Shown: positions 21,581-52,476 of the stretch, piece by piece
How the letters are laid out: each line of letters starts with the position of its first letter
Position numbering within the stretch: the first letter of the stretch is position 1
Virus record (IMG/VR): IMGVR_UViG_3300042923_000281
Coordinates: 62,001-126,000 of that record
DNA length: 64,000 nt
Direction: 5' to 3' (one strand)
Program-made: the position numbers and the translations under genes
The notes under the pieces: generated by a model
What the model saw: the letters and a program-made list of their open reading frames with translations, nothing else
The model's database searches: none
Told to the model about the DNA's origin: nothing

Positions 21581-21620
21581 ACATACGGCAAAAGAGCGGA
21601 GCCGAAGCCCCGCTCTTTTG
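21581..21620 (-). terminator. Terminator after the major capsid gene
   Basis: CAAAAGAGCGG/CCGCTCTTTTG stem; GCCGTATG tail. Confidence 0.75.
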
Positions 21621-38917: not shown

Positions 38918-39481
38918 TTAGTCGAGAGAACCGTTCTCAACGAACCGGATCTGTCCTTCGTCGGTAATGCGCAGTCGCCCTTCGTCAGTGATCCGACGGA
39001 TACCGCCAGACCAGAACAAATGGATCTTCTTGTCCCCGATGTAGATGAGGGACTTCTCTTTGGCGAAGATGTCCACGTCCATGAACTGGAACAGGGAGTT
39101 GAAGGGATCGTTGATGTCCACATCGAACTCACCGTCCACCAGGTTGAACTTGCCATCAAGGTAGGCAATCAAGGCCGCCTTGTCTGCAATGTCCTTCACC
39201 TCTTCCAGATCCACTTGGAAGACAGGGTAGTGGGTCTCGATGTCAGCCCGAGCGTAGTACAGATCCTCTTGGCCTTTGAAGGGACCGCCGGGTTTGGCCT
39301 TGACCAAGATCACGGTGTTGTCACCATCGTCGTCCTCGCCTTCTTCCAGAGCACGAGGGAGTTCTACTTCCACCATGTTGGGGTTCAGCTTAACGCGGTT
39401 GGTCCGATAGATCAGGGCGAAGAGGTTCTCCAGCGCTGTCTTGTCGGGGTCGAACTTGAAGTTGTCAGTCTTGCACGCCAT
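38918..39481 (-). CDS. Putative virion structural protein
   Basis: 187 aa; LI...N start, LYYARAD and SL.YIG motifs like other phiKZ-family tail proteins. Confidence 0.6.
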   Translation of the reverse strand: MACKTDNFKFDPDKTALENLFALIYRTNRVKLNPNMVEVELPRALEEGEDDDGDNTVILVKAKPGGPFKGQEDLYYARADIETHYPVFQVDLEEVKDIADKAALIAYLDGKFNLVDGEFDVDINDPFNSLFQFMDVDIFAKEKSLIYIGDKKIHLFWSGGIRRITDEGRLRITDEGQIRFVENGSLD

Positions 39482-39505
39482 GAGATAGCCTCAGTAAAGC
39501 CCTAG

Positions 39506-39871
39506 TCATAGTATTTCCCCACGCACCACCAAACGGTAGCCATTGTCCTCTGCCACATCCTGAATGAACTCAACAAAGATGTGTCGGTGACAGAACTTAC
39601 CCGCCTTGCAGTAACAGGCCACACAGATGGAACCCTCTTGTTCGAGGAACTCTTGAAAGGCTTCAGGATAGAGCCTGAACTGCTCTCTGAGGCGTTCTAG
39701 GTACAAGACCGTGTACTGCTCGTCTGTGACCTCATTACGCTTGTAAGCCCACAGTACGGACGGCTCAGGTGCAAAGACAGCGAGACCTGACTTGACAGTG
39801 ATGTCGATCAGGGTGACTTGCCTCTCCTTAGCCTTGCGCCATTGGGAGAGAGCGATGGTGTAGAGTTCCAT
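39506..39871 (-). CDS. DUF488-like protein
   Basis: FAP...L..YK, Y...Y...L and C.C...FCHR pattern. Confidence 0.6.
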   Translation of the reverse strand: MELYTIALSQWRKAKERQVTLIDITVKSGLAVFAPEPSVLWAYKRNEVTDEQYTVLYLERLREQFRLYPEAFQEFLEQEGSICVACYCKAGKFCHRHIFVEFIQDVAEDNGYRLVVRGEIL

Positions 39872-39902
39872 AATTCCCTCCTTCGTCTATACAGTGACAC
39901 GG

Positions 39903-40335
39903 CAAAATAAAAATAAAAGCCATCCGCAGTGCATCCCCCAGTGCTCTATCCGAAGACAGAATACTGGAGGCTGCACTAAAGATGGCATCACTCCATGAGG
40001 AGTGGCACTTCGTGACGCCTGATGTCCCCTTTCAGCCGGATCGGGAGACACCATTGGCAGCGACGTGGAGCACACGCTCAGACGCGTCATCGTTTACCGT
40101 AACACACCACGGGTAGCGTTGGCGTGGGGCTACGGAACCGCAACAACCCTAACTATCACGACGAGTTCATTAGGGGCAACGAAATAGTAGCTGAGGGCGC
40201 GATGCCCTCAGCTGTGTGGCCCATCCAATGGGGGAGTGGACGGGTACCACGAGTGCGAGAGCAAATGCTCTCCTCTTTTCTACGCAATCAAGCGCATGGA
40301 TGCTGGATTATCTGTTAAAGAACAGGTCCTACATA
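39903..40335 (-). ncRNA. Candidate ~430-nt structured non-coding RNA
   Basis: TATGTAG start motif, many hairpins, terminal hairpin plus U tract, no credible ORF. Confidence 0.45.
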
Positions 40336-40356
40336 CTATACAGGCTTTTTGCCAGT

Positions 40357-41805
40357 TTAGATGTCCATGAGTGCTTGAAGAGCGCGGGTGTTGGTGTCCC
40401 CGTCACGAATGCAGGCTGCAACCCAGGTGTCGTAATGGCGAACCAGCACGTCACCGGCACGGTCAACGACCATGTTGGTGTTCAGGCAGAACTCGTGATT
40501 GATTTCACCTTCGAGTGCAGCTTTACCTTCAGCGGTCAGCAGACCGTTGGAGTCCAGCCACGACATCAGTTGACGCTGAATGCCAACAACGGCATCGACG
40601 TCCTGAACACGAGTGGTGATGTTTTCGATGACGATTGGATCAGCAACCGATTCAGTCGAGACCTTCTTCTTCGGGTTGCCTTCGGCGTCCAGTTCTTCTT
40701 CAGCTTCCGGATCGATTGGATCGGTCGGTTCAGCATCAGGATCTACTGGATCGGCATCGGCGTTGGCCGCAGCGATTTCAGCTTCTGGGTCGATCGGGTC
40801 AGTTGGCTCTTCGATTGGATCGACAGGGTCAACTGGATCTACTGGATCAGCGCCCGGGTCAACGGGGTCGACCGGATCTACTGGGTCCACAGGTGCATCG
40901 GGATCGACAGGGTCGACCGGCGCATCAGGGTCCAGTGGGTCAGTGCTGCCAGCGGCATCCGGATCAACCGGTGCGTCTGGATCAACAACGTCGCCTTCAC
41001 CGTTGTTCTGAGTCGACGGGGTGTCTTTCTCGATGGTGCTGGCATTGACGCCGTCATCAAGTTTCGGCCCCGATGGATTCTCACCGCGGTGCTGTTCGAT
41101 CAGGTCGCCCATGCGGTCTTCACCGTCAGTGCCAATGGCAGCAGCTTCGGAGCGAGCAGCTTCTGCGCTCTCTTCAGCACTTTCCTTGGCCGTGGCAACC
41201 AGCGCTTCGATACGGTCAACCGCGTCGGACATGTCGCCCAGGACTTGGGTTTGTTCCAGGTCTTCCATGGAGACACCCAGAGCAACCAGACCGTCGCCCA
41301 TGCGGCGAGCCACGTTCAGCACCAGAGGACGGGCTGCTTCGATGGTCATGCCTTCCATGGAGATCACTGCTTTCACAGTGTCGATGTTTTCCTTGAACAG
41401 GCCCAGGGCTTCTGCCTTGAAGTTCAGGGATTCCAGCGAGGCCGTGGTTTCGGTGTCGCGGGTGGTGAACGGCACAGGCTCTTCGTTATCAGCCTTGGCT
41501 TGCAGAGCTTGCTCGATGGTCTCGACTTCAGTCAGACGAGGAGTAAGCACGTCTTGCATGATCAGCTCGACTTGAGCTTGTGGCTCGCTCACGCCATCGA
41601 CGACCTGCAAGTCGGCCTGATGATCAGCTTGTTCAAGCACGTTTTCAGCCAGCACCATGAAGGACGAAGCGGAATCGCTTTCCAACGATGGGGTCAGCAG
41701 AAGTGCCTGACCAACCGACATCAGAGCTTCGAGACTGGTGCGGTAGGCTTGAGTCTCGTGAAGCATTTGAGCCGCGTTTGGTCGTGCGGTGGTATTGTGC
41801 GTCAT
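40357..41805 (-). CDS. Putative inner-head/virion protein with propeptide and DP repeats
   Basis: 482 aa; many S/A-x-E sites (TSLE, PSLE, ASLE, SMEG, STES); DPVDP repeats. Confidence 0.7.
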   Translation of the reverse strand: MTHNTTARPNAAQMLHETQAYRTSLEALMSVGQALLLTPSLESDSASSFMVLAENVLEQADHQADLQVVDGVSEPQAQVELIMQDVLTPRLTEVETIEQALQAKADNEEPVPFTTRDTETTASLESLNFKAEALGLFKENIDTVKAVISMEGMTIEAARPLVLNVARRMGDGLVALGVSMEDLEQTQVLGDMSDAVDRIEALVATAKESAEESAEAARSEAAAIGTDGEDRMGDLIEQHRGENPSGPKLDDGVNASTIEKDTPSTQNNGEGDVVDPDAPVDPDAAGSTDPLDPDAPVDPVDPDAPVDPVDPVDPVDPGADPVDPVDPVDPIEEPTDPIDPEAEIAAANADADPVDPDAEPTDPIDPEAEEELDAEGNPKKKVSTESVADPIVIENITTRVQDVDAVVGIQRQLMSWLDSNGLLTAEGKAALEGEINHEFCLNTNMVVDRAGDVLVRHYDTWVAACIRDGDTNTRALQALMDI

Positions 41806-41851
41806 GTTATGACCCTCTTCTCAGATATACTCCCCTTTGAGGAATATAGGA

Positions 41852-43933
41852 ATGTACGCCAGCTTTTCGCGCATGTTGGGGATAATCTCTGTCAAAGAGA
41901 CTGACTCTCACATTATAGTGAACGGAATACCCGGTCTGCGCTTTCAAAAGGACATCTACAACTTTTGGAAAACCAGCAAGATCGCCAACAACATCTTTAC
42001 TTCGGTGTCACGGTCCTCCGTTAAGTTTCCGAAGTTCTTCGCCATCGAAGTCCTGTACATCCTGGAGCAACTACAGGATTCTCGCCGTACCTTCAGCGGT
42101 CGTCGGACATTGTCCAAGGTCGCAGAAGAGCTCGTCAAATCCACATGGCTGCACAACATCGGCGTGACAGGGTTCGCATCTCGCTTGAATTACAAGGCGC
42201 TTGATGACCTCAATGTCACATTATTTCAGCACCAACTTAATTTTTTACGGGAGTACGACCGAACCACGTTTGAATATGACCTCAATGGCATGCTCATGGA
42301 CGTGGCAGCAGGTGGCGGTAAAACCATTACCAACTTTGCACTCGGTCATGTGCTTGGCGCTGATACCAAAGTGTTCATCGTACCGAAGAACTCCGTGTTC
42401 GACGTATGGGTCAAGACGATCAAGATGCTTTTCAAGAAAGGCATCCCGAACTATTGGCATAGTCTAAGTGGAGATGAGCCCAAGATTGGGCAAGAGTACT
42501 ACATCGTTCACTACGACTACATGGACAAGTTCCTGACGTTCGTGAAGCAGAACCGTGGCTCGTTCGGCAAGGTCTTTGTGGCCATTGACGAATCCCACAA
42601 CTTCAACGAGCAGTCGGCACGGACGCAATTCTTGGTGGACATCTGTCATGGACTTAAAGCACGCGATGTGGTGCACGCATCTGGTACGCCGTTCAAGGCC
42701 ATGGGCTCTGAAGCGATCACGTTGCTCAAAACAGTGTGTTCTGACTTCACCCCTGAAGTAGAGGCAGCCTTCCGCAAACTCTTCGGTAAGGAAGCCAAGA
42801 AGGCCCTGGAGATCCTTGCTAACCGAATCGGTATCGTGTCCTTTAAGGTGCCGAAGCAGGACATCGAAACCCCAGGCGTGGAGTACCATGAAGTCAAGAT
42901 CGGTCTGAAAAACGGTCTGGACTACACGTTGACTTCCGTGCGGGACAAGATGAGCAAGTTCATCGAAGAGCGCCTGAAGTACTACCGGGATGGGATGAAG
43001 GAGTACGAAGGTCTGTACGAACGCTGCCTCATCATGCATGAGAAGTCGCTGGCTCGGGCTGCTCCTGCACAGATGCGTGAGTTCGAACTGTACCAGAGCT
43101 ACGTCAAGACCATCCGCAAAGGCTACGACCCAGTCACCATGAAAGACATGGTGATGTTCTGCAACCGGTACGAGCTGAAGAAGATTGTCCCTTCGTTGCC
43201 TGATGCGTACCGCAAACCGTTCCTGAACGTGCGAGCGATCATCAAGTACGTCGAACTCAAGGTCATGGGTGAAGCACTGTCCCAAGTCCTAGGTCGTCTG
43301 CGTATCCAGTGCCACATTGACATGCTGCCCAACATGCCGTTGGATGACATCATTGACAACGCTACGTCAAAGACGGTGGTCTTCACCAGCTACGTCGATG
43401 TCGTCAAGGAACTGGAAGTGTTGCTCAAGGCGGCTGGGTACAAGCCACTGCTGGTGTATGGGGAAACCAACAAGGACCTCACCAACATCGTTAAGCAGTT
43501 CGAGAACGACCCGGATGCGAACCCGCTCATTGCGACGTTCAAGTCCTTGTCCACCGCAGTGCCTCTGACCATGGCCAATACGGAGATCTTCACCAACTCT
43601 CCGTACCGTGATTACGAACGTACTCAGGCAGTTGCTCGGGTTGACCGTATCGGTCAGAAGCATCGGTGCCATGTGCACGAGACCTTCCTTGACACAGGTC
43701 AAGAGCCGAACATCTCCACGCGGTCTAAGGACATCATGCAGTGGTCGAAGAACCAGGTCGAGGCAATCTTAGGGGTACAGTCCCCGGACGATCTGGAAGC
43801 CTCTCTGGAGTCTCTGGTTGAGAACCCAGAAGCATCGATCGACGACGGTGAGGCATTCATGGAGAAGCTGCGAGGCATGCTTCCTGTGGACACCATTCCG
43901 CAAGACGAAGTCGAAGAAGCTCTCGCACCATAA
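41852..43933 (+). CDS. SF2 (SNF2/DEAD-like) helicase
   Basis: AAGGGKT Walker A, IDESH, ASGTP and QAVARVDRIGQ motif VI. Confidence 0.85.
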   Translation: MYASFSRMLGIISVKETDSHIIVNGIPGLRFQKDIYNFWKTSKIANNIFTSVSRSSVKFPKFFAIEVLYILEQLQDSRRTFSGRRTLSKVAEELVKSTWLHNIGVTGFASRLNYKALDDLNVTLFQHQLNFLREYDRTTFEYDLNGMLMDVAAGGGKTITNFALGHVLGADTKVFIVPKNSVFDVWVKTIKMLFKKGIPNYWHSLSGDEPKIGQEYYIVHYDYMDKFLTFVKQNRGSFGKVFVAIDESHNFNEQSARTQFLVDICHGLKARDVVHASGTPFKAMGSEAITLLKTVCSDFTPEVEAAFRKLFGKEAKKALEILANRIGIVSFKVPKQDIETPGVEYHEVKIGLKNGLDYTLTSVRDKMSKFIEERLKYYRDGMKEYEGLYERCLIMHEKSLARAAPAQMREFELYQSYVKTIRKGYDPVTMKDMVMFCNRYELKKIVPSLPDAYRKPFLNVRAIIKYVELKVMGEALSQVLGRLRIQCHIDMLPNMPLDDIIDNATSKTVVFTSYVDVVKELEVLLKAAGYKPLLVYGETNKDLTNIVKQFENDPDANPLIATFKSLSTAVPLTMANTEIFTNSPYRDYERTQAVARVDRIGQKHRCHVHETFLDTGQEPNISTRSKDIMQWSKNQVEAILGVQSPDDLEASLESLVENPEASIDDGEAFMEKLRGMLPVDTIPQDEVEEALAP

Positions 43934-51553: not shown

Positions 51554-51595
51554 GAGACACCTCAAATTCAAGACTATAGGATTGGTATCTCGGCA

Positions 51596-52476
51596 AAACA
51601 AAAAAAGAAAGAAGTCTTGGGACACTGTTCGTCATCATTCGCCTCAGGGAGATCAGCCCCTTACTACGTTTCCGAGTCGACAGTGTCCCGTAACCTTGTG
51701 TAGCGCTTGTCTTCCTCATCCCCCGAGCCCTTTCACCAAGTGCGTCATCGCGTAGTGCGAGGCCTTGCGTTAATCAGTCGTAGGTTTGGATCGGACTGGA
51801 GGCCATTGCCATCCAATTCAACCGAACTCAATCGGAATCAATAGTCATCAAATGTGTTCACTGACACGGACTATTGATTAGCTCTCGTGCACCTTAGGCA
51901 CGCGCTGGATAGTCCGCTCAGACACCGCCGTGCGATAGCCCTCTGCTGGTTTCACGACGCACACTTGCGAAGCTCGTGCCATGAAGAGTACACCTTCTAA
52001 GCGAGCCATTGCTGGCATCGCCCTTGGGAGAAGACCTTTCCCCAAGTCCTGATGGTGCATCTTATCCGACGACGCAATTGCGCTCTTCTCTTGCTTAGCG
52101 ACTGCACGATTGTGCTCTTCCGCTTGGGCAGACAAGGTGACAGCTAGGGCCAACGCCACGAGAGTGGAGAAGCCGCGGGTTCTGATCAGTAGCTCCTTAG
52201 AGGCTTAATTGAACGCTCATGAGTTATCAATGGTCTCCAGTGCTACGGTGCACCTACCGTTCCACGCGCCTTATGCGTGAGGTAGGGCACCGAAGTCACT
52301 GAAACGGATGTAACGGTCCCGGTAATGCGCGGCGGGTCATCGGTCTCATTCGGCGGCGTCACGAGTGACACGGCCTTTAGAAGACGTTGTACTGATGTCC
52401 AGATGCGGCGCACGGAACCAAAGAACGATCCGAACAATGGCACGATCCTTAATCGATGTCACAGTGCTACTACATA
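51596..52476 (-). ncRNA. Candidate ~870-nt structured transcript (ncRNA, or structured mRNA for an ATC-start exported peptide)
   Basis: Promoter motif at 52470-52503, many long helices, terminal 10-bp stem plus T tract. Confidence 0.45.

What the first reader, a model, noticed from the sequence alone, without database searches (positions are those of the whole stretch)
39903..40335. ~430-nt hairpin-rich intergenic unit with its own start motif and terminator
Seen: the gap between the head-protein gene and the DUF488-like gene begins on the minus strand with TATGTAG (40335-40329). It contains stems AGCTGAGGGC/GCCCTCAGCT (40189-98/40204-13), GAGAGC/GCTCTC (40257-62/40267-72), CCCTAA/TTAGGG (40147-52/40170-75), CACTCC/GGAGTG (39989-94/39999-40004) and CTGTT/AACAG (40312-16/40321-25). 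It ends in a three-segment hairpin (39920-39985) followed by a long U tract. ORFs in the gap are short, lack an RBS and lack phage codon bias. Inference: a late structured ncRNA.
Basis: partly seen in the sequence, partly recalled or inferred. Interest (0 to 1): 0.65.

Follow-up and report, generated by a model that had tools for sequence, protein, structure and literature searches.

The report
New structured RNA gene in jumbo phages
The 430-base gap is a real, previously undescribed gene for a large folded non-coding RNA, conserved with compensating base-pair changes in about a dozen lineages of phiKZ-like giant Pseudomonas-type phages; its job is unknown.

Summary
The gap between a 482-aa ORF and the DUF488 gene (window about 39904-40341, minus strand) holds a conserved, highly structured non-coding RNA. 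I found homologues in 17 further phage-sized records, giving about 13 lineages below 95% identity. All are relatives of Pseudomonas phage pPa_SNUABM_DT01, and the RNA always lies in the same gene order. Helices covary strongly. In the central three-way junction, 100% of cells pair and 12 of 20 pairs show compensatory changes; no shuffle out of 500 reached the observed covariation score. Junctions and several hairpin loops are invariant. G-U pairs place the RNA on the minus strand. No reading frame is conserved. Rfam 15 and ARAGORN match nothing.

The unit starts at an invariant GTATAGTATG. It contains the phiKZ late-promoter core TATG, which is the second most enriched 4-mer upstream of genes in this genome. 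The 9-mer TATAGTATG occurs exactly twice per genome in six genomes. The second copy, homologous in five of the six genomes, heads another conserved non-coding unit. The RNA ends in a long hairpin plus T-tract, and DUF488 then has its own TATAG or TATG motif. The best reading is an independent ncRNA gene acting in trans.

Expression, timing and function are untested.

The parts
40357..41805 (-). Upstream gene p482. It is an acidic protein with PVDP-type repeats, is specific to this clade, and has unknown function.
   Evidence: ORF list and translation. No Pfam, PHROG or PDB match. In the phage collection, tblastn finds it only in DT01. It lies upstream of the RNA in every homologue.
40343..40353 (-). 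Small hairpin (GGC-AAAAA-GCC) just before the start motif.
   Evidence: Sequence. Equivalent small hairpins with different sequences occur in about half of the relatives. A hairpin directly before TATG recurs at other gene starts in this genome. This is a weak feature.
40332..40341 (-). Start motif GTATAGTATG. TATAG is at 40340-40336 and TATG at 40335-40332. The inferred transcription start is G 40336 or G 40332.
   Evidence: The motif is kept in all homologues, with one variant each in L083 (TGTG) and L115 (TATGTTATG). TATG ranks 2 of 256 4-mers for enrichment 14-60 nt upstream of SD-plus-start sites. The phiKZ late promoter is T(-3)ATG(+1) (PMC4666361). TATAGTATG occurs exactly twice per genome in 6 genomes.
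39904..40336 (-). The ncRNA body, about 425-433 nt.
   Evidence: Fold z = -6.15. 15-sequence alignments A5 and A12. RNAalifold finds 68-86 pairs, 30-34 of them with compensatory changes.
40317..40341 (-). A 25-nt 5' block that is identical in 13 homologues. It probably combines the promoter and the initially transcribed region.
   Evidence: An exact-match scan found 7 IMG/VR contigs; alignment. The first ~20 nt resemble the start of the second non-coding unit.
40281..40296 (-). Hairpin P2 (UGCGC/GCGUA). The stem is invariant and the loop varies.
   Evidence: 5 pairs, all unchanged.
40189..40272 (-). Three variable hairpins: Hb 40257-40272, Hc 40216-40250 (C-rich loop) and Hd 40189-40213.
   Evidence: Each of 15 homologues folds this segment into exactly three hairpins, with z from -3.1 to -7.1, although the sequences cannot be aligned. 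Compensatory changes versus DT01 are seen.
40090..40182 (-). Core three-way junction. It comprises the closing helix UCGUU/AACGA, hairpin He (40147-40175, invariant 15-nt loop at 40154-40168), hairpin Hf (40097-40135), and invariant junction strands.
   Evidence: Model R1 and alignment A7. 100% of cells pair, 12 of 20 pairs are compensatory, and the covariation score is 0.532 versus 0.229 shuffled (0 of 500) and at most 0.12 when partners are slid.
40062..40088 (-). Hairpin Hg with the conserved GCUCC.
   Evidence: (pairs 300-305 with 324-329, compensatory).
40020..40053 (-). Hairpin Hh, whose loop (40030-40042) carries the invariant CCGGCU.
   Evidence: Per-sequence folds give a long hairpin around CCGGCU in the 12 of 15 homologues whose segment was extracted cleanly. 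The MAFFT alignment was too poor for RNAalifold to recover it.
39984..40019 (-). Hairpin Hi, whose apical loop (39998-40005) shows the invariant CUCCU, which resembles the anti-Shine-Dalgarno sequence.
   Evidence: 7 of 8 pairs compensatory; covariation 0.854 versus 0.304 shuffled (0 of 500), and at most 0.30 when slid.
39904..39977 (-). Terminator-like 3' hairpin Ht (39928-39977; an outer extension reaches 39919-39986 in the window) followed by a T-tract (39904-39918).
   Evidence: about 20 pairs, several compensatory. The T-tract followed by (T/A)TGCCGT is conserved. TTTTGCCG follows a hairpin and/or T-rich run at four of its six sites in this genome, this one included. This hairpin sequence is unique in the genome.
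39887..39892 (-). GTATAG between the terminator and the DUF488 ribosome-binding site. It is the likely promoter or start signal of the downstream gene.
   Evidence: TATAG (10 relatives) or TATG (3 relatives) sits at this place in 13 of 15 homologues.
39506..39871 (-). Downstream gene, DUF488-N3a family, homologue of phiKZ gp151.
   Evidence: Pfam PF22751. tblastn matches 289 phage records. The 201phi2-1 annotation reads "similar to phiKZ gp151".

Best explanation
This is a gene for a roughly 430-nt structured non-coding RNA of a family not in Rfam. The family is confined to the pPa_SNUABM_DT01-like clade of phiKZ-related jumbo phages.

How I think it is made (inferred):
- The phage's own multisubunit RNA polymerase starts at a tandem TATAG/TATG signal of phiKZ late-promoter type, at window 40336 or 40332.
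- Transcription stops at a long conserved hairpin plus U-tract, at about 39904.
- The downstream DUF488 gene has its own start signal, so the RNA is an insulated transcription unit.

What the RNA looks like (shown):
- It folds into a chain of about eleven hairpins around a central three-way junction.
- Helices covary while junction strands and several loops are invariant. The invariant loops are a 15-nt loop, a CCGGCU loop and a CUCCU loop.

How I think it works (inferred): it acts in trans through its folded shape, most likely as the RNA core of a ribonucleoprotein or as a decoy. In that role it would present fixed loops to a phage or host partner during the later part of infection.
For: Structure and conservation:
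- Fold z = -6.15.
- 17 further homologous records, all on phage-sized contigs.
- 54-99% nucleotide identity between homologues.
- RNAalifold: 30-34 pairs with compensatory changes.
- Core junction: 100% paired, 12 of 20 pairs compensatory, 0 of 500 shuffles reach the score.
- Hi hairpin: 0 of 500 shuffles reach the score.
- The 5' segment forms three hairpins in all 15 homologues.

It is RNA, on the minus strand, and not coding:
- 17 G-U cells and no A-C cells in the core.
- No conserved ORF.

It looks like its own transcription unit:
- The start motif is invariant, and TATG is the second most enriched 4-mer upstream of genes, matching the phiKZ late promoter.
- The genome encodes a phage RNAP beta-like protein, and DT01 has both RNAP sets.
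- TATAGTATG occurs exactly twice per genome in 6 genomes. The second copy follows a full terminator (own genome) and heads another conserved non-coding unit in 5 of the 6 genomes.
- After the terminator, a TATAG or TATG motif precedes the DUF488 ribosome-binding site in 13 of 15 homologues.
- In L088 a 336-aa ORF lies between the RNA and DUF488.

The gene order p482 - RNA - DUF488 is kept in every homologue.
Against: - There are no transcript data of any kind.
- The upstream gene ends with only a weak hairpin and no T-tract. Its mRNA therefore probably also reads into the element.
- No partner, target or catalytic activity is known.
- No long-range or pseudoknot pairing could be supported, because all candidate partners are invariant.
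- The invariance of the 5' block and the 3' hairpin could reflect DNA-level signals rather than RNA function.
Confidence: 0.6

Rival explanations
1. The element is a structured 3' untranslated region of the p482 mRNA, or a stable fragment processed from it. It has no promoter of its own. It would stabilise that mRNA or be released by cleavage at the conserved 5' motif.
For: Only 15 nt and a weak hairpin without a T-tract separate the p482 stop codon from the motif. p482 and the RNA always occur together, and both are specific to this clade.
Against: The same 9-mer heads a second non-coding unit that sits directly after a full hairpin-plus-T-tract terminator in the own genome, so that unit needs its own start. 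The motif contains the enriched TATG core, and in L115 it is a tandem TATG. A stabiliser would not need invariant loops and junctions along 430 nt.
Confidence: 0.2
2. The element is a giant cis-acting leader for the DUF488 / virion-protein operon, working as an attenuator or riboswitch. The 3' hairpin would be a conditional terminator controlled by the upstream fold.
For: It lies directly upstream of DUF488 in the same orientation. Invariant junctions with covarying helices resemble riboswitch aptamers. Two alternative pairings exist on paper. The AACGAUG strand can pair with the He loop instead of UUCGUU. The C-rich Hc loop is complementary to the G-run of the terminator.
Against: A separate TATAG or TATG start motif lies between the terminator and the ribosome-binding site in 13 of 15 homologues. 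An extra ORF separates the RNA from DUF488 in L088. Other chimalliviruses have DUF488 with no such leader. The alternative pairings involve invariant bases only, so nothing supports them. 430 nt is far longer than any known leader of this kind.
Confidence: 0.08
3. The element is a ribozyme or a remnant of a self-splicing or mobile RNA, such as a group I-like intron that has lost its host gene context.
For: Its size and its pattern of invariant junctions with covarying stems are typical of large ribozymes. Jumbo phages do carry group I introns (noted in PMC11512511).
Against: No Rfam hit appears for any ribozyme or intron family, even at E up to 10, in the window or in 10 homologues. The flanking ORFs are complete and separate in all genomes. 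The element is single-copy. The genome has no reverse transcriptase. No P3/P7-like pseudoknot could be found.
Confidence: 0.07
4. The element is not an RNA. It is either a DNA-level element (origin, packaging or protein-binding site made of cruciforms) or a cluster of small protein-coding genes.
For: The plus strand also folds well (z = -6.17), as expected for any set of inverted repeats. Short ORFs exist in each copy.
Against: The helices keep G-U pairs that would be A-C mismatches on the other strand or in DNA. The core has 17 such cells and no A-C cell, and G-U or U-G pairs are invariant in P2, the GCUG/CGGC helix and Ht. No frame is open at the same place in all homologues, and the candidate AUG is lost in 4 of them.
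Confidence: 0.03

Closest known systems
GOLLD and ROOL RNAs (large ornate ncRNAs often carried by phages and prophages; Rfam families)
   Same: They are large (over 400 nt), richly structured, phage-borne, stand-alone RNA genes of unknown biochemical function, recognised by covariation.
   Different: cmscan finds no sequence or structure match. The hosts differ: those RNAs occur in Firmicutes, rumen and lake phages, while this one occurs in Pseudomonas-type chimalliviruses. This RNA is not next to tRNA genes (none in the window). It looks like a chain of hairpins around one three-way junction. Whether it forms multimers as those RNAs do (bioRxiv 10.1101/2024.12.08.627333, abstract listed) is unknown.
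Small RNAs mapped in phiKZ and 201phi2-1 by ONT-cappable-seq (for example sRNA005 upstream of the gp182/gp277 tail gene; PMC11512511)
   Same: They are non-coding transcripts of nucleus-forming jumbo phages, defined by a phage promoter followed closely by a terminator, and they are conserved by position among related phages.
   Different: Those are under 250 nt and mostly come from 5' UTRs. This RNA is about 430 nt, sits at a different locus, and its core model is absent from the phiKZ, 201phi2-1, Phabio, Viktualia, SPN3US and Noxifer genomes.
Protein-sequestering decoy RNAs (CsrB/RsmY/RsmZ, 6S RNA, CrcZ); comparison from my own knowledge
   Same: They are stand-alone RNAs with many hairpins whose conserved loops, not their stems, carry the function, and they end in an intrinsic terminator.
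   Different: Decoys repeat one loop motif many times. Here each conserved loop is different, and the junction strands are also invariant, which points to a specific three-dimensional fold. No Rfam match. The purine-rich sister unit outside the window looks more like an Rsm-type sponge than this RNA does.
phiKZ late transcription units (TATG promoter read by the non-virion RNAP)
   Same: The TATG core sits at the predicted start, and TATG is enriched upstream of genes in this genome. The clade encodes phiKZ-type RNAP subunits.
   Different: The signal here is an extended, invariant tandem TATAG-TATG followed by a conserved ~15-nt downstream block, and that extended form is used only twice per genome. 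Start site and timing are untested.

Membership tests
Any Rfam 15 family (including RNase P, tmRNA, 6S, group I/II introns, GOLLD, ROOL, raiA, OLE, HEARO, riboswitches, small ribozymes) | A covariance-model match at or near the family's gathering score. | tested here: not met
   cmscan at E up to 10 on window 39000-41000 gave only a spurious miRNA hit in the neighbouring gene. In 10 homologue loci, only miRNA-precursor models hit inside the element, on its 3' hairpin, and far below their thresholds.
tRNA / tmRNA | A cloverleaf or tRNA-like domain plus a tag reading frame. | tested here: not met
   ARAGORN found 0 genes in the whole window.
Group I / group II self-splicing intron | It interrupts a host gene, with a conserved catalytic core (P3-P7 pseudoknot, or domain V) and, for group II, often a reverse transcriptase. 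| tested here: not met
   The flanking ORFs are complete, with their own stop codon and their own RBS plus start codon, in all homologues. No Rfam intron hit. No supported long-range pairing. No RT in the genome.
Structured ncRNA (generic criteria) | Helices maintained by compensatory substitutions across homologues, above shuffled and slid controls. | tested here: met
   Core: covariation 0.532 versus 0.229 (0 of 500), at most 0.12 when slid. Hi: 0.854 versus 0.304 (0 of 500). Whole RNA: 30-34 compensatory pairs.
Structured ncRNA (generic criteria) | It does not code for protein. | tested here: met
   No frame is open at a common position or strand in 15 homologues. Indels are not multiples of three. 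The AUG at 40090 is not conserved.
Structured ncRNA (generic criteria) | It is transcribed as a discrete RNA. | not testable with these tools
No transcriptome of this clade appeared in the papers found.
phiKZ-type late transcription unit | A TATG core with G as +1, read by a phage-encoded multisubunit RNAP. | tested here: inconclusive
   The motif is present and conserved, TATG is enriched upstream of genes, and RNAP genes are present. The start site, the polymerase and the timing are not measurable here.
Intrinsic (factor-independent) terminator | A GC-rich hairpin directly followed by a U-tract. | tested here: met
   A ~20-bp hairpin at 39928-39977 is followed by a T-tract at 39904-39918, and both are conserved in the homologues. 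The simple scanner missed it because its rule counts at most 20 pairs and needs the T-run within 0-2 bases of the stem, and this hairpin has internal loops.
Retron / DRT-type template ncRNA | An adjacent reverse-transcriptase gene. | tested here: not met
   No RVT_1 match anywhere in the 277-kb genome.

The most novel reading that the evidence does not exclude
This RNA, together with the purine-rich sister unit that shares its otherwise unused TATAGTATG start signal, forms a dedicated two-RNA programme of DT01-like nucleus-forming phages. Under this reading, the RNA studied here is a new class of large functional RNA. It would be either the core of a phage ribonucleoprotein or a ribozyme. Its invariant CUCCU loop, which resembles the anti-Shine-Dalgarno sequence, and its other fixed loops would engage the translation or RNA-surveillance machinery of the host.
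Probability: 0.2. Interest if true: 0.85.

Novelty: new variant of a known kind. Interest (0 to 1): 0.66.

Why it matters
From my own knowledge, bacterial and phage RNAs above about 400 nt with this degree of structural conservation are few, and those with known functions are ribozymes or ribonucleoprotein cores. Nucleus-forming jumbo phages are being studied intensively for how they separate transcription from translation and evade host defences. None of the papers I found describes a large structured RNA in these phages.

This family is small and well defined, and it comes with a testable start signal. It is also present in a cultured, sequenced phage of P. aeruginosa (pPa_SNUABM_DT01), so expression, structure and knock-out experiments are immediately possible.

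Tried and rejected
- **Rfam at permissive thresholds**, on the window and on 10 homologue loci: nothing.
- **ARAGORN:** nothing.
- **RNase P idea.** I noticed short resemblances (CCGGCU, GGUAAAC), but no model hit supports them, so I dropped it.
- **16S rRNA resemblance.** GUAAACGAUG also occurs in 16S rRNA by my recollection. My rough estimate is about 0.65 such 10-mer matches by chance, so I dropped this too.
- **Core model R1 against other phage genomes** (201phi2-1, Phabio, Viktualia, SPN3US, Noxifer, phiKZ): absent.
- **Pattern scan of 185,579 species genomes:** only two hits, and nhmmer showed both to be chance.
- **First loose pattern scan of IMG/VR:** mostly chance hits, so I filtered with nhmmer.
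- **Search for tertiary or pseudoknot pairs** by all-against-all covariation. It was swamped by correlations that come from relatedness. All conserved complementary blocks are invariant, so they cannot be tested.
- **Pairing between this RNA and the sister unit.** Duplex energies were no better than shuffled controls, and a 6-bp loop match is not conserved in DT01.
- **TATAG alone as a general promoter word:** not enriched genome-wide (4 of 69, rank 278 of 1024), although it swaps with TATG at two conserved positions.
- **The 3' hairpin as a repeated genome-wide terminator motif:** it is unique in the genome.
- **Complement of the 15-nt He loop in the own genome:** no near-perfect target; the hits at up to 4 mismatches (103) look like chance.
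- **MAFFT plus RNAalifold on the variable hairpins:** failed, so I used per-sequence folds instead.
- **p482 function:** no match by family scans, PDB sequence search or the atlas. I ran no further search on it.

Full report
**What is at the coordinates**

- On the minus strand, a 482-aa ORF ends at 40357 and a 121-aa DUF488-N3a gene starts at 39871.
- The 485-nt gap folds far better than shuffled sequence: -201.9 kcal/mol, z = -6.15, and 0 of 100 shuffles fold as well. The plus strand folds equally well, as any set of inverted repeats would.
- TATGTAG is at 40335-40329.
- A long hairpin (39928-39977, with an outer extension to 39919-39986) is followed by a T-tract at 39904-39918.

**Which genome this is**

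- The window is bases 62,001-126,000 of a 276,978-bp IMG/VR phage genome with direct terminal repeats.
- The only GenBank relative at the DNA level is Pseudomonas phage pPa_SNUABM_DT01, at 71.5% identity across the gap.
- The DT01 paper describes DT01 as related to phiKZ and Noxifer and as encoding both virion and non-virion multisubunit RNA polymerases (PMC8541153).
- The window's genome also encodes an RNAP beta-like protein.

**The family**

- An exact scan for the first 25 nt found seven IMG/VR contigs.
- Degenerate two-block patterns, checked with nhmmer, added more from IMG/VR and from JGI/ENA metagenomes.
- In all, 17 further records carry the element. They make up about 13 lineages below 95% identity, with pairwise identity of 54-99%.
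- Wherever the contig is long enough, the order is SNF2-type helicase (divergent), the p482 gene, the RNA, DUF488, then a DUF7941 virion protein.
- The element is single-copy in its genome.
- A covariance model of its core finds nothing in 201phi2-1, Phabio, Viktualia, SPN3US, Noxifer or phiKZ. In the first four of these, DUF488 is directly preceded by another gene with no gap.
- A scan of one genome for each of 185,579 prokaryote species gave only two chance hits.
- The family is therefore confined to the DT01-like clade.

**It is a structured RNA on the minus strand**

- RNAalifold on 9 and on 15 sequences predicts 86 and 68 pairs, of which 34 and 30 keep pairing through changes on both sides.
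- For the central three-way junction (window 40090-40182), aligned to model R1:
  - 100% of 280 cells form standard pairs.
  - 12 of 20 pairs show compensatory changes.
  - The covariation score is 0.532, against 0.229 in shuffles (0 of 500 reach it) and at most 0.12 when partners are slid.
- The hairpin Hi scores 0.854 against 0.304 (0 of 500).
- The segment holding Hb, Hc and Hd cannot be aligned by sequence. It still folds into exactly three hairpins in all 15 homologues, with z from -3.1 to -7.1.
- The core alone contains 17 G-U cells and no A-C cell. Several helices have invariant G-U pairs. The structure therefore belongs to the minus-strand transcript, not to DNA or the opposite strand.
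- No reading frame is open at a common place.
- The AUG at 40090, which starts the longest ORF in the window's gap, is AUA or ACG in four relatives.

**Architecture**

Reading 5' to 3':
- An invariant 25-nt start block.
- A variable hairpin region.
- P2, which has an invariant stem.
- Hb, Hc (C-rich loop) and Hd.
- A three-way junction closed by UCGUU/AACGA. It carries He, with an invariant 15-nt loop, and Hf.
- Hg.
- Hh, with CCGGCU in its loop.
- Hi, with CUCCU in its loop.
- The 3' hairpin Ht and the U-tract.

Stems vary and covary, while junction strands and most loops are invariant. That pattern fits a specific fold or specific partners. No long-range helix or pseudoknot could be supported.

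- CACTCC/GGAGTG is replaced family-wide by Hi.
- CTGTT/AACAG is seen only in the window's close kin.

**Start and end signals**

- The phiKZ late promoter is TATG with G as +1 (PMC4666361).
- In this genome I counted every k-mer 14-60 nt upstream of SD-plus-start sites, without prior assumptions. TATG ranks second of 256 4-mers, behind only TTTT, and TTATG, TATGT and TTATGT also rank high. Many of these TATG sites directly follow a hairpin.
- The element begins with GTATAGTATG. The most divergent homologue (L115) has TATGTTATG there.
- Between the terminator and the DUF488 ribosome-binding site, 10 homologues have TATAG and 3 have TATG at the same place. The two words therefore look interchangeable.
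- TATAG alone is not enriched genome-wide.
- The 9-mer TATAGTATG occurs exactly twice in the window's genome and exactly twice, on one strand, in each of five relatives. The reversed control occurs 0-1 times.
- In five of the six genomes, the second copy heads a homologous ~330-nt purine-rich non-coding unit. In the window's own genome it follows a full hairpin-plus-T-tract terminator, and the unit ends in its own terminator.
- That second unit needs its own promoter. By analogy, the studied RNA is likely to have one too.
- The 3' end carries the T-tract followed by (T/A)TGCCGT. TTTTGCCG follows a hairpin and/or T-rich run at four of its six sites in this genome.
- All of this is comparative inference. 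No RNA reads could be obtained.

**What it is not**

- Rfam 15 gives no match at E up to 10 for the window or for ten homologues.
- ARAGORN finds no tRNA or tmRNA.
- The genome has no reverse transcriptase.
- The flanking genes are complete and separate, so it is not an intron.
- The upstream protein is acidic, with PVDP-type repeats, and matches no family or solved structure. Calling it a head protein is unsupported.

**Most likely mechanism and rivals**

- *Shown:* a conserved, folded, non-coding RNA-level element on the minus strand.
- *Inferred:* it is an independent transcription unit made by the phage polymerase from a TAT(A)G start and ended by Ht.
- *Inferred further:* it acts in trans through its fold and its invariant loops, as a ribonucleoprotein core or a decoy. 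I put 0.6 on this package.
- *Rivals:*
  - A structured 3' UTR or processed fragment of the p482 mRNA (0.2).
  - A cis-acting leader for DUF488 (0.08). The downstream start motif and the ORF inserted in L088 argue against it.
  - A ribozyme or intron remnant (0.07).
  - A DNA element or small ORFs (0.03).
- The CUCCU loop is identical to part of the 16S anti-Shine-Dalgarno sequence by my own recollection. This is only a lead.

**Novelty**

- Large orphan structured RNAs in phages are a known kind (GOLLD, ROOL), and small RNAs have been mapped in phiKZ and 201phi2-1 (PMC11512511).
- This family matches none of them and sits in a different phage group.
- Searches for the DT01 phage name and for ncRNAs of jumbo or nucleus-forming phages found no paper describing it.
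- I rate it a new variant of a known kind, with interest 0.66.

Noticed in passing
Outside the window: own genome G000:C1 about 262,503-262,860, minus strand (= L114:~700-1046:-). Homologues: L104 (DT01), L106, L107, L113.: A second conserved non-coding unit of about 330-360 nt begins with the same TGTATAGTATG. It is purine-rich, with many GGA/GGAAGG/GGAGG runs, ends in a hairpin plus T-tract, and is followed by GTATAG and a gene start. It has no Rfam match, and with only 5 sequences it shows little covariation. It could be an Rsm/CsrA-type sponge, but that is speculation.
   Followed up: partly
Whole own genome (for example window 39900-39907, 51591-51598, 21586-21593).: TTTTGCCG occurs six times in this genome, and at four of the sites it follows a hairpin and/or T-rich run. 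In relatives the same place often reads TATGCCGT, which matches the genome's common hairpin-then-TATGCC pattern in front of genes. Terminator tails and promoter cores seem to be fused in this clade.
   Followed up: partly
Whole own genome.: CTAACC is the most enriched 6-mer 14-60 nt upstream of SD-plus-start sites (16 of 58 occurrences). It may mark another promoter class. For comparison, the phiKZ middle promoter motif is AAanTTACc.
   Followed up: no
Window 40357-41805 (-).: The upstream gene encodes a very acidic protein with a long run of PVDP/DPVDP repeats between conserved N- and C-terminal parts. It is specific to the RNA-bearing clade and always lies next to the RNA. No family, structure or name could be assigned.
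   Followed up: partly
L088:752-1762 (+).: In one divergent relative, a 336-aa ORF lies between the RNA's terminator and DUF488. This shows that the RNA and DUF488 can be separated.
   Followed up: no
Window 40216-41904 (+).: A 562-aa open frame lies antisense to the p482 gene. It is most likely a shadow ORF of the repeat-rich, GC-biased coding strand and not a gene.
   Followed up: no
Window 39507-39510 (-), inside the 3' end of DUF488.: A TATG lies 25 nt upstream of the DUF7941 virion-protein gene start (38918-39481). This fits a late-type internal promoter for the structural gene.
   Followed up: no
Whole own genome.: TATAG (69 copies) and GTATAG (15 copies) are rare for a 277-kb genome of 54% G+C. 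Two of the four GTATAG copies in the window flank the RNA.
   Followed up: partly
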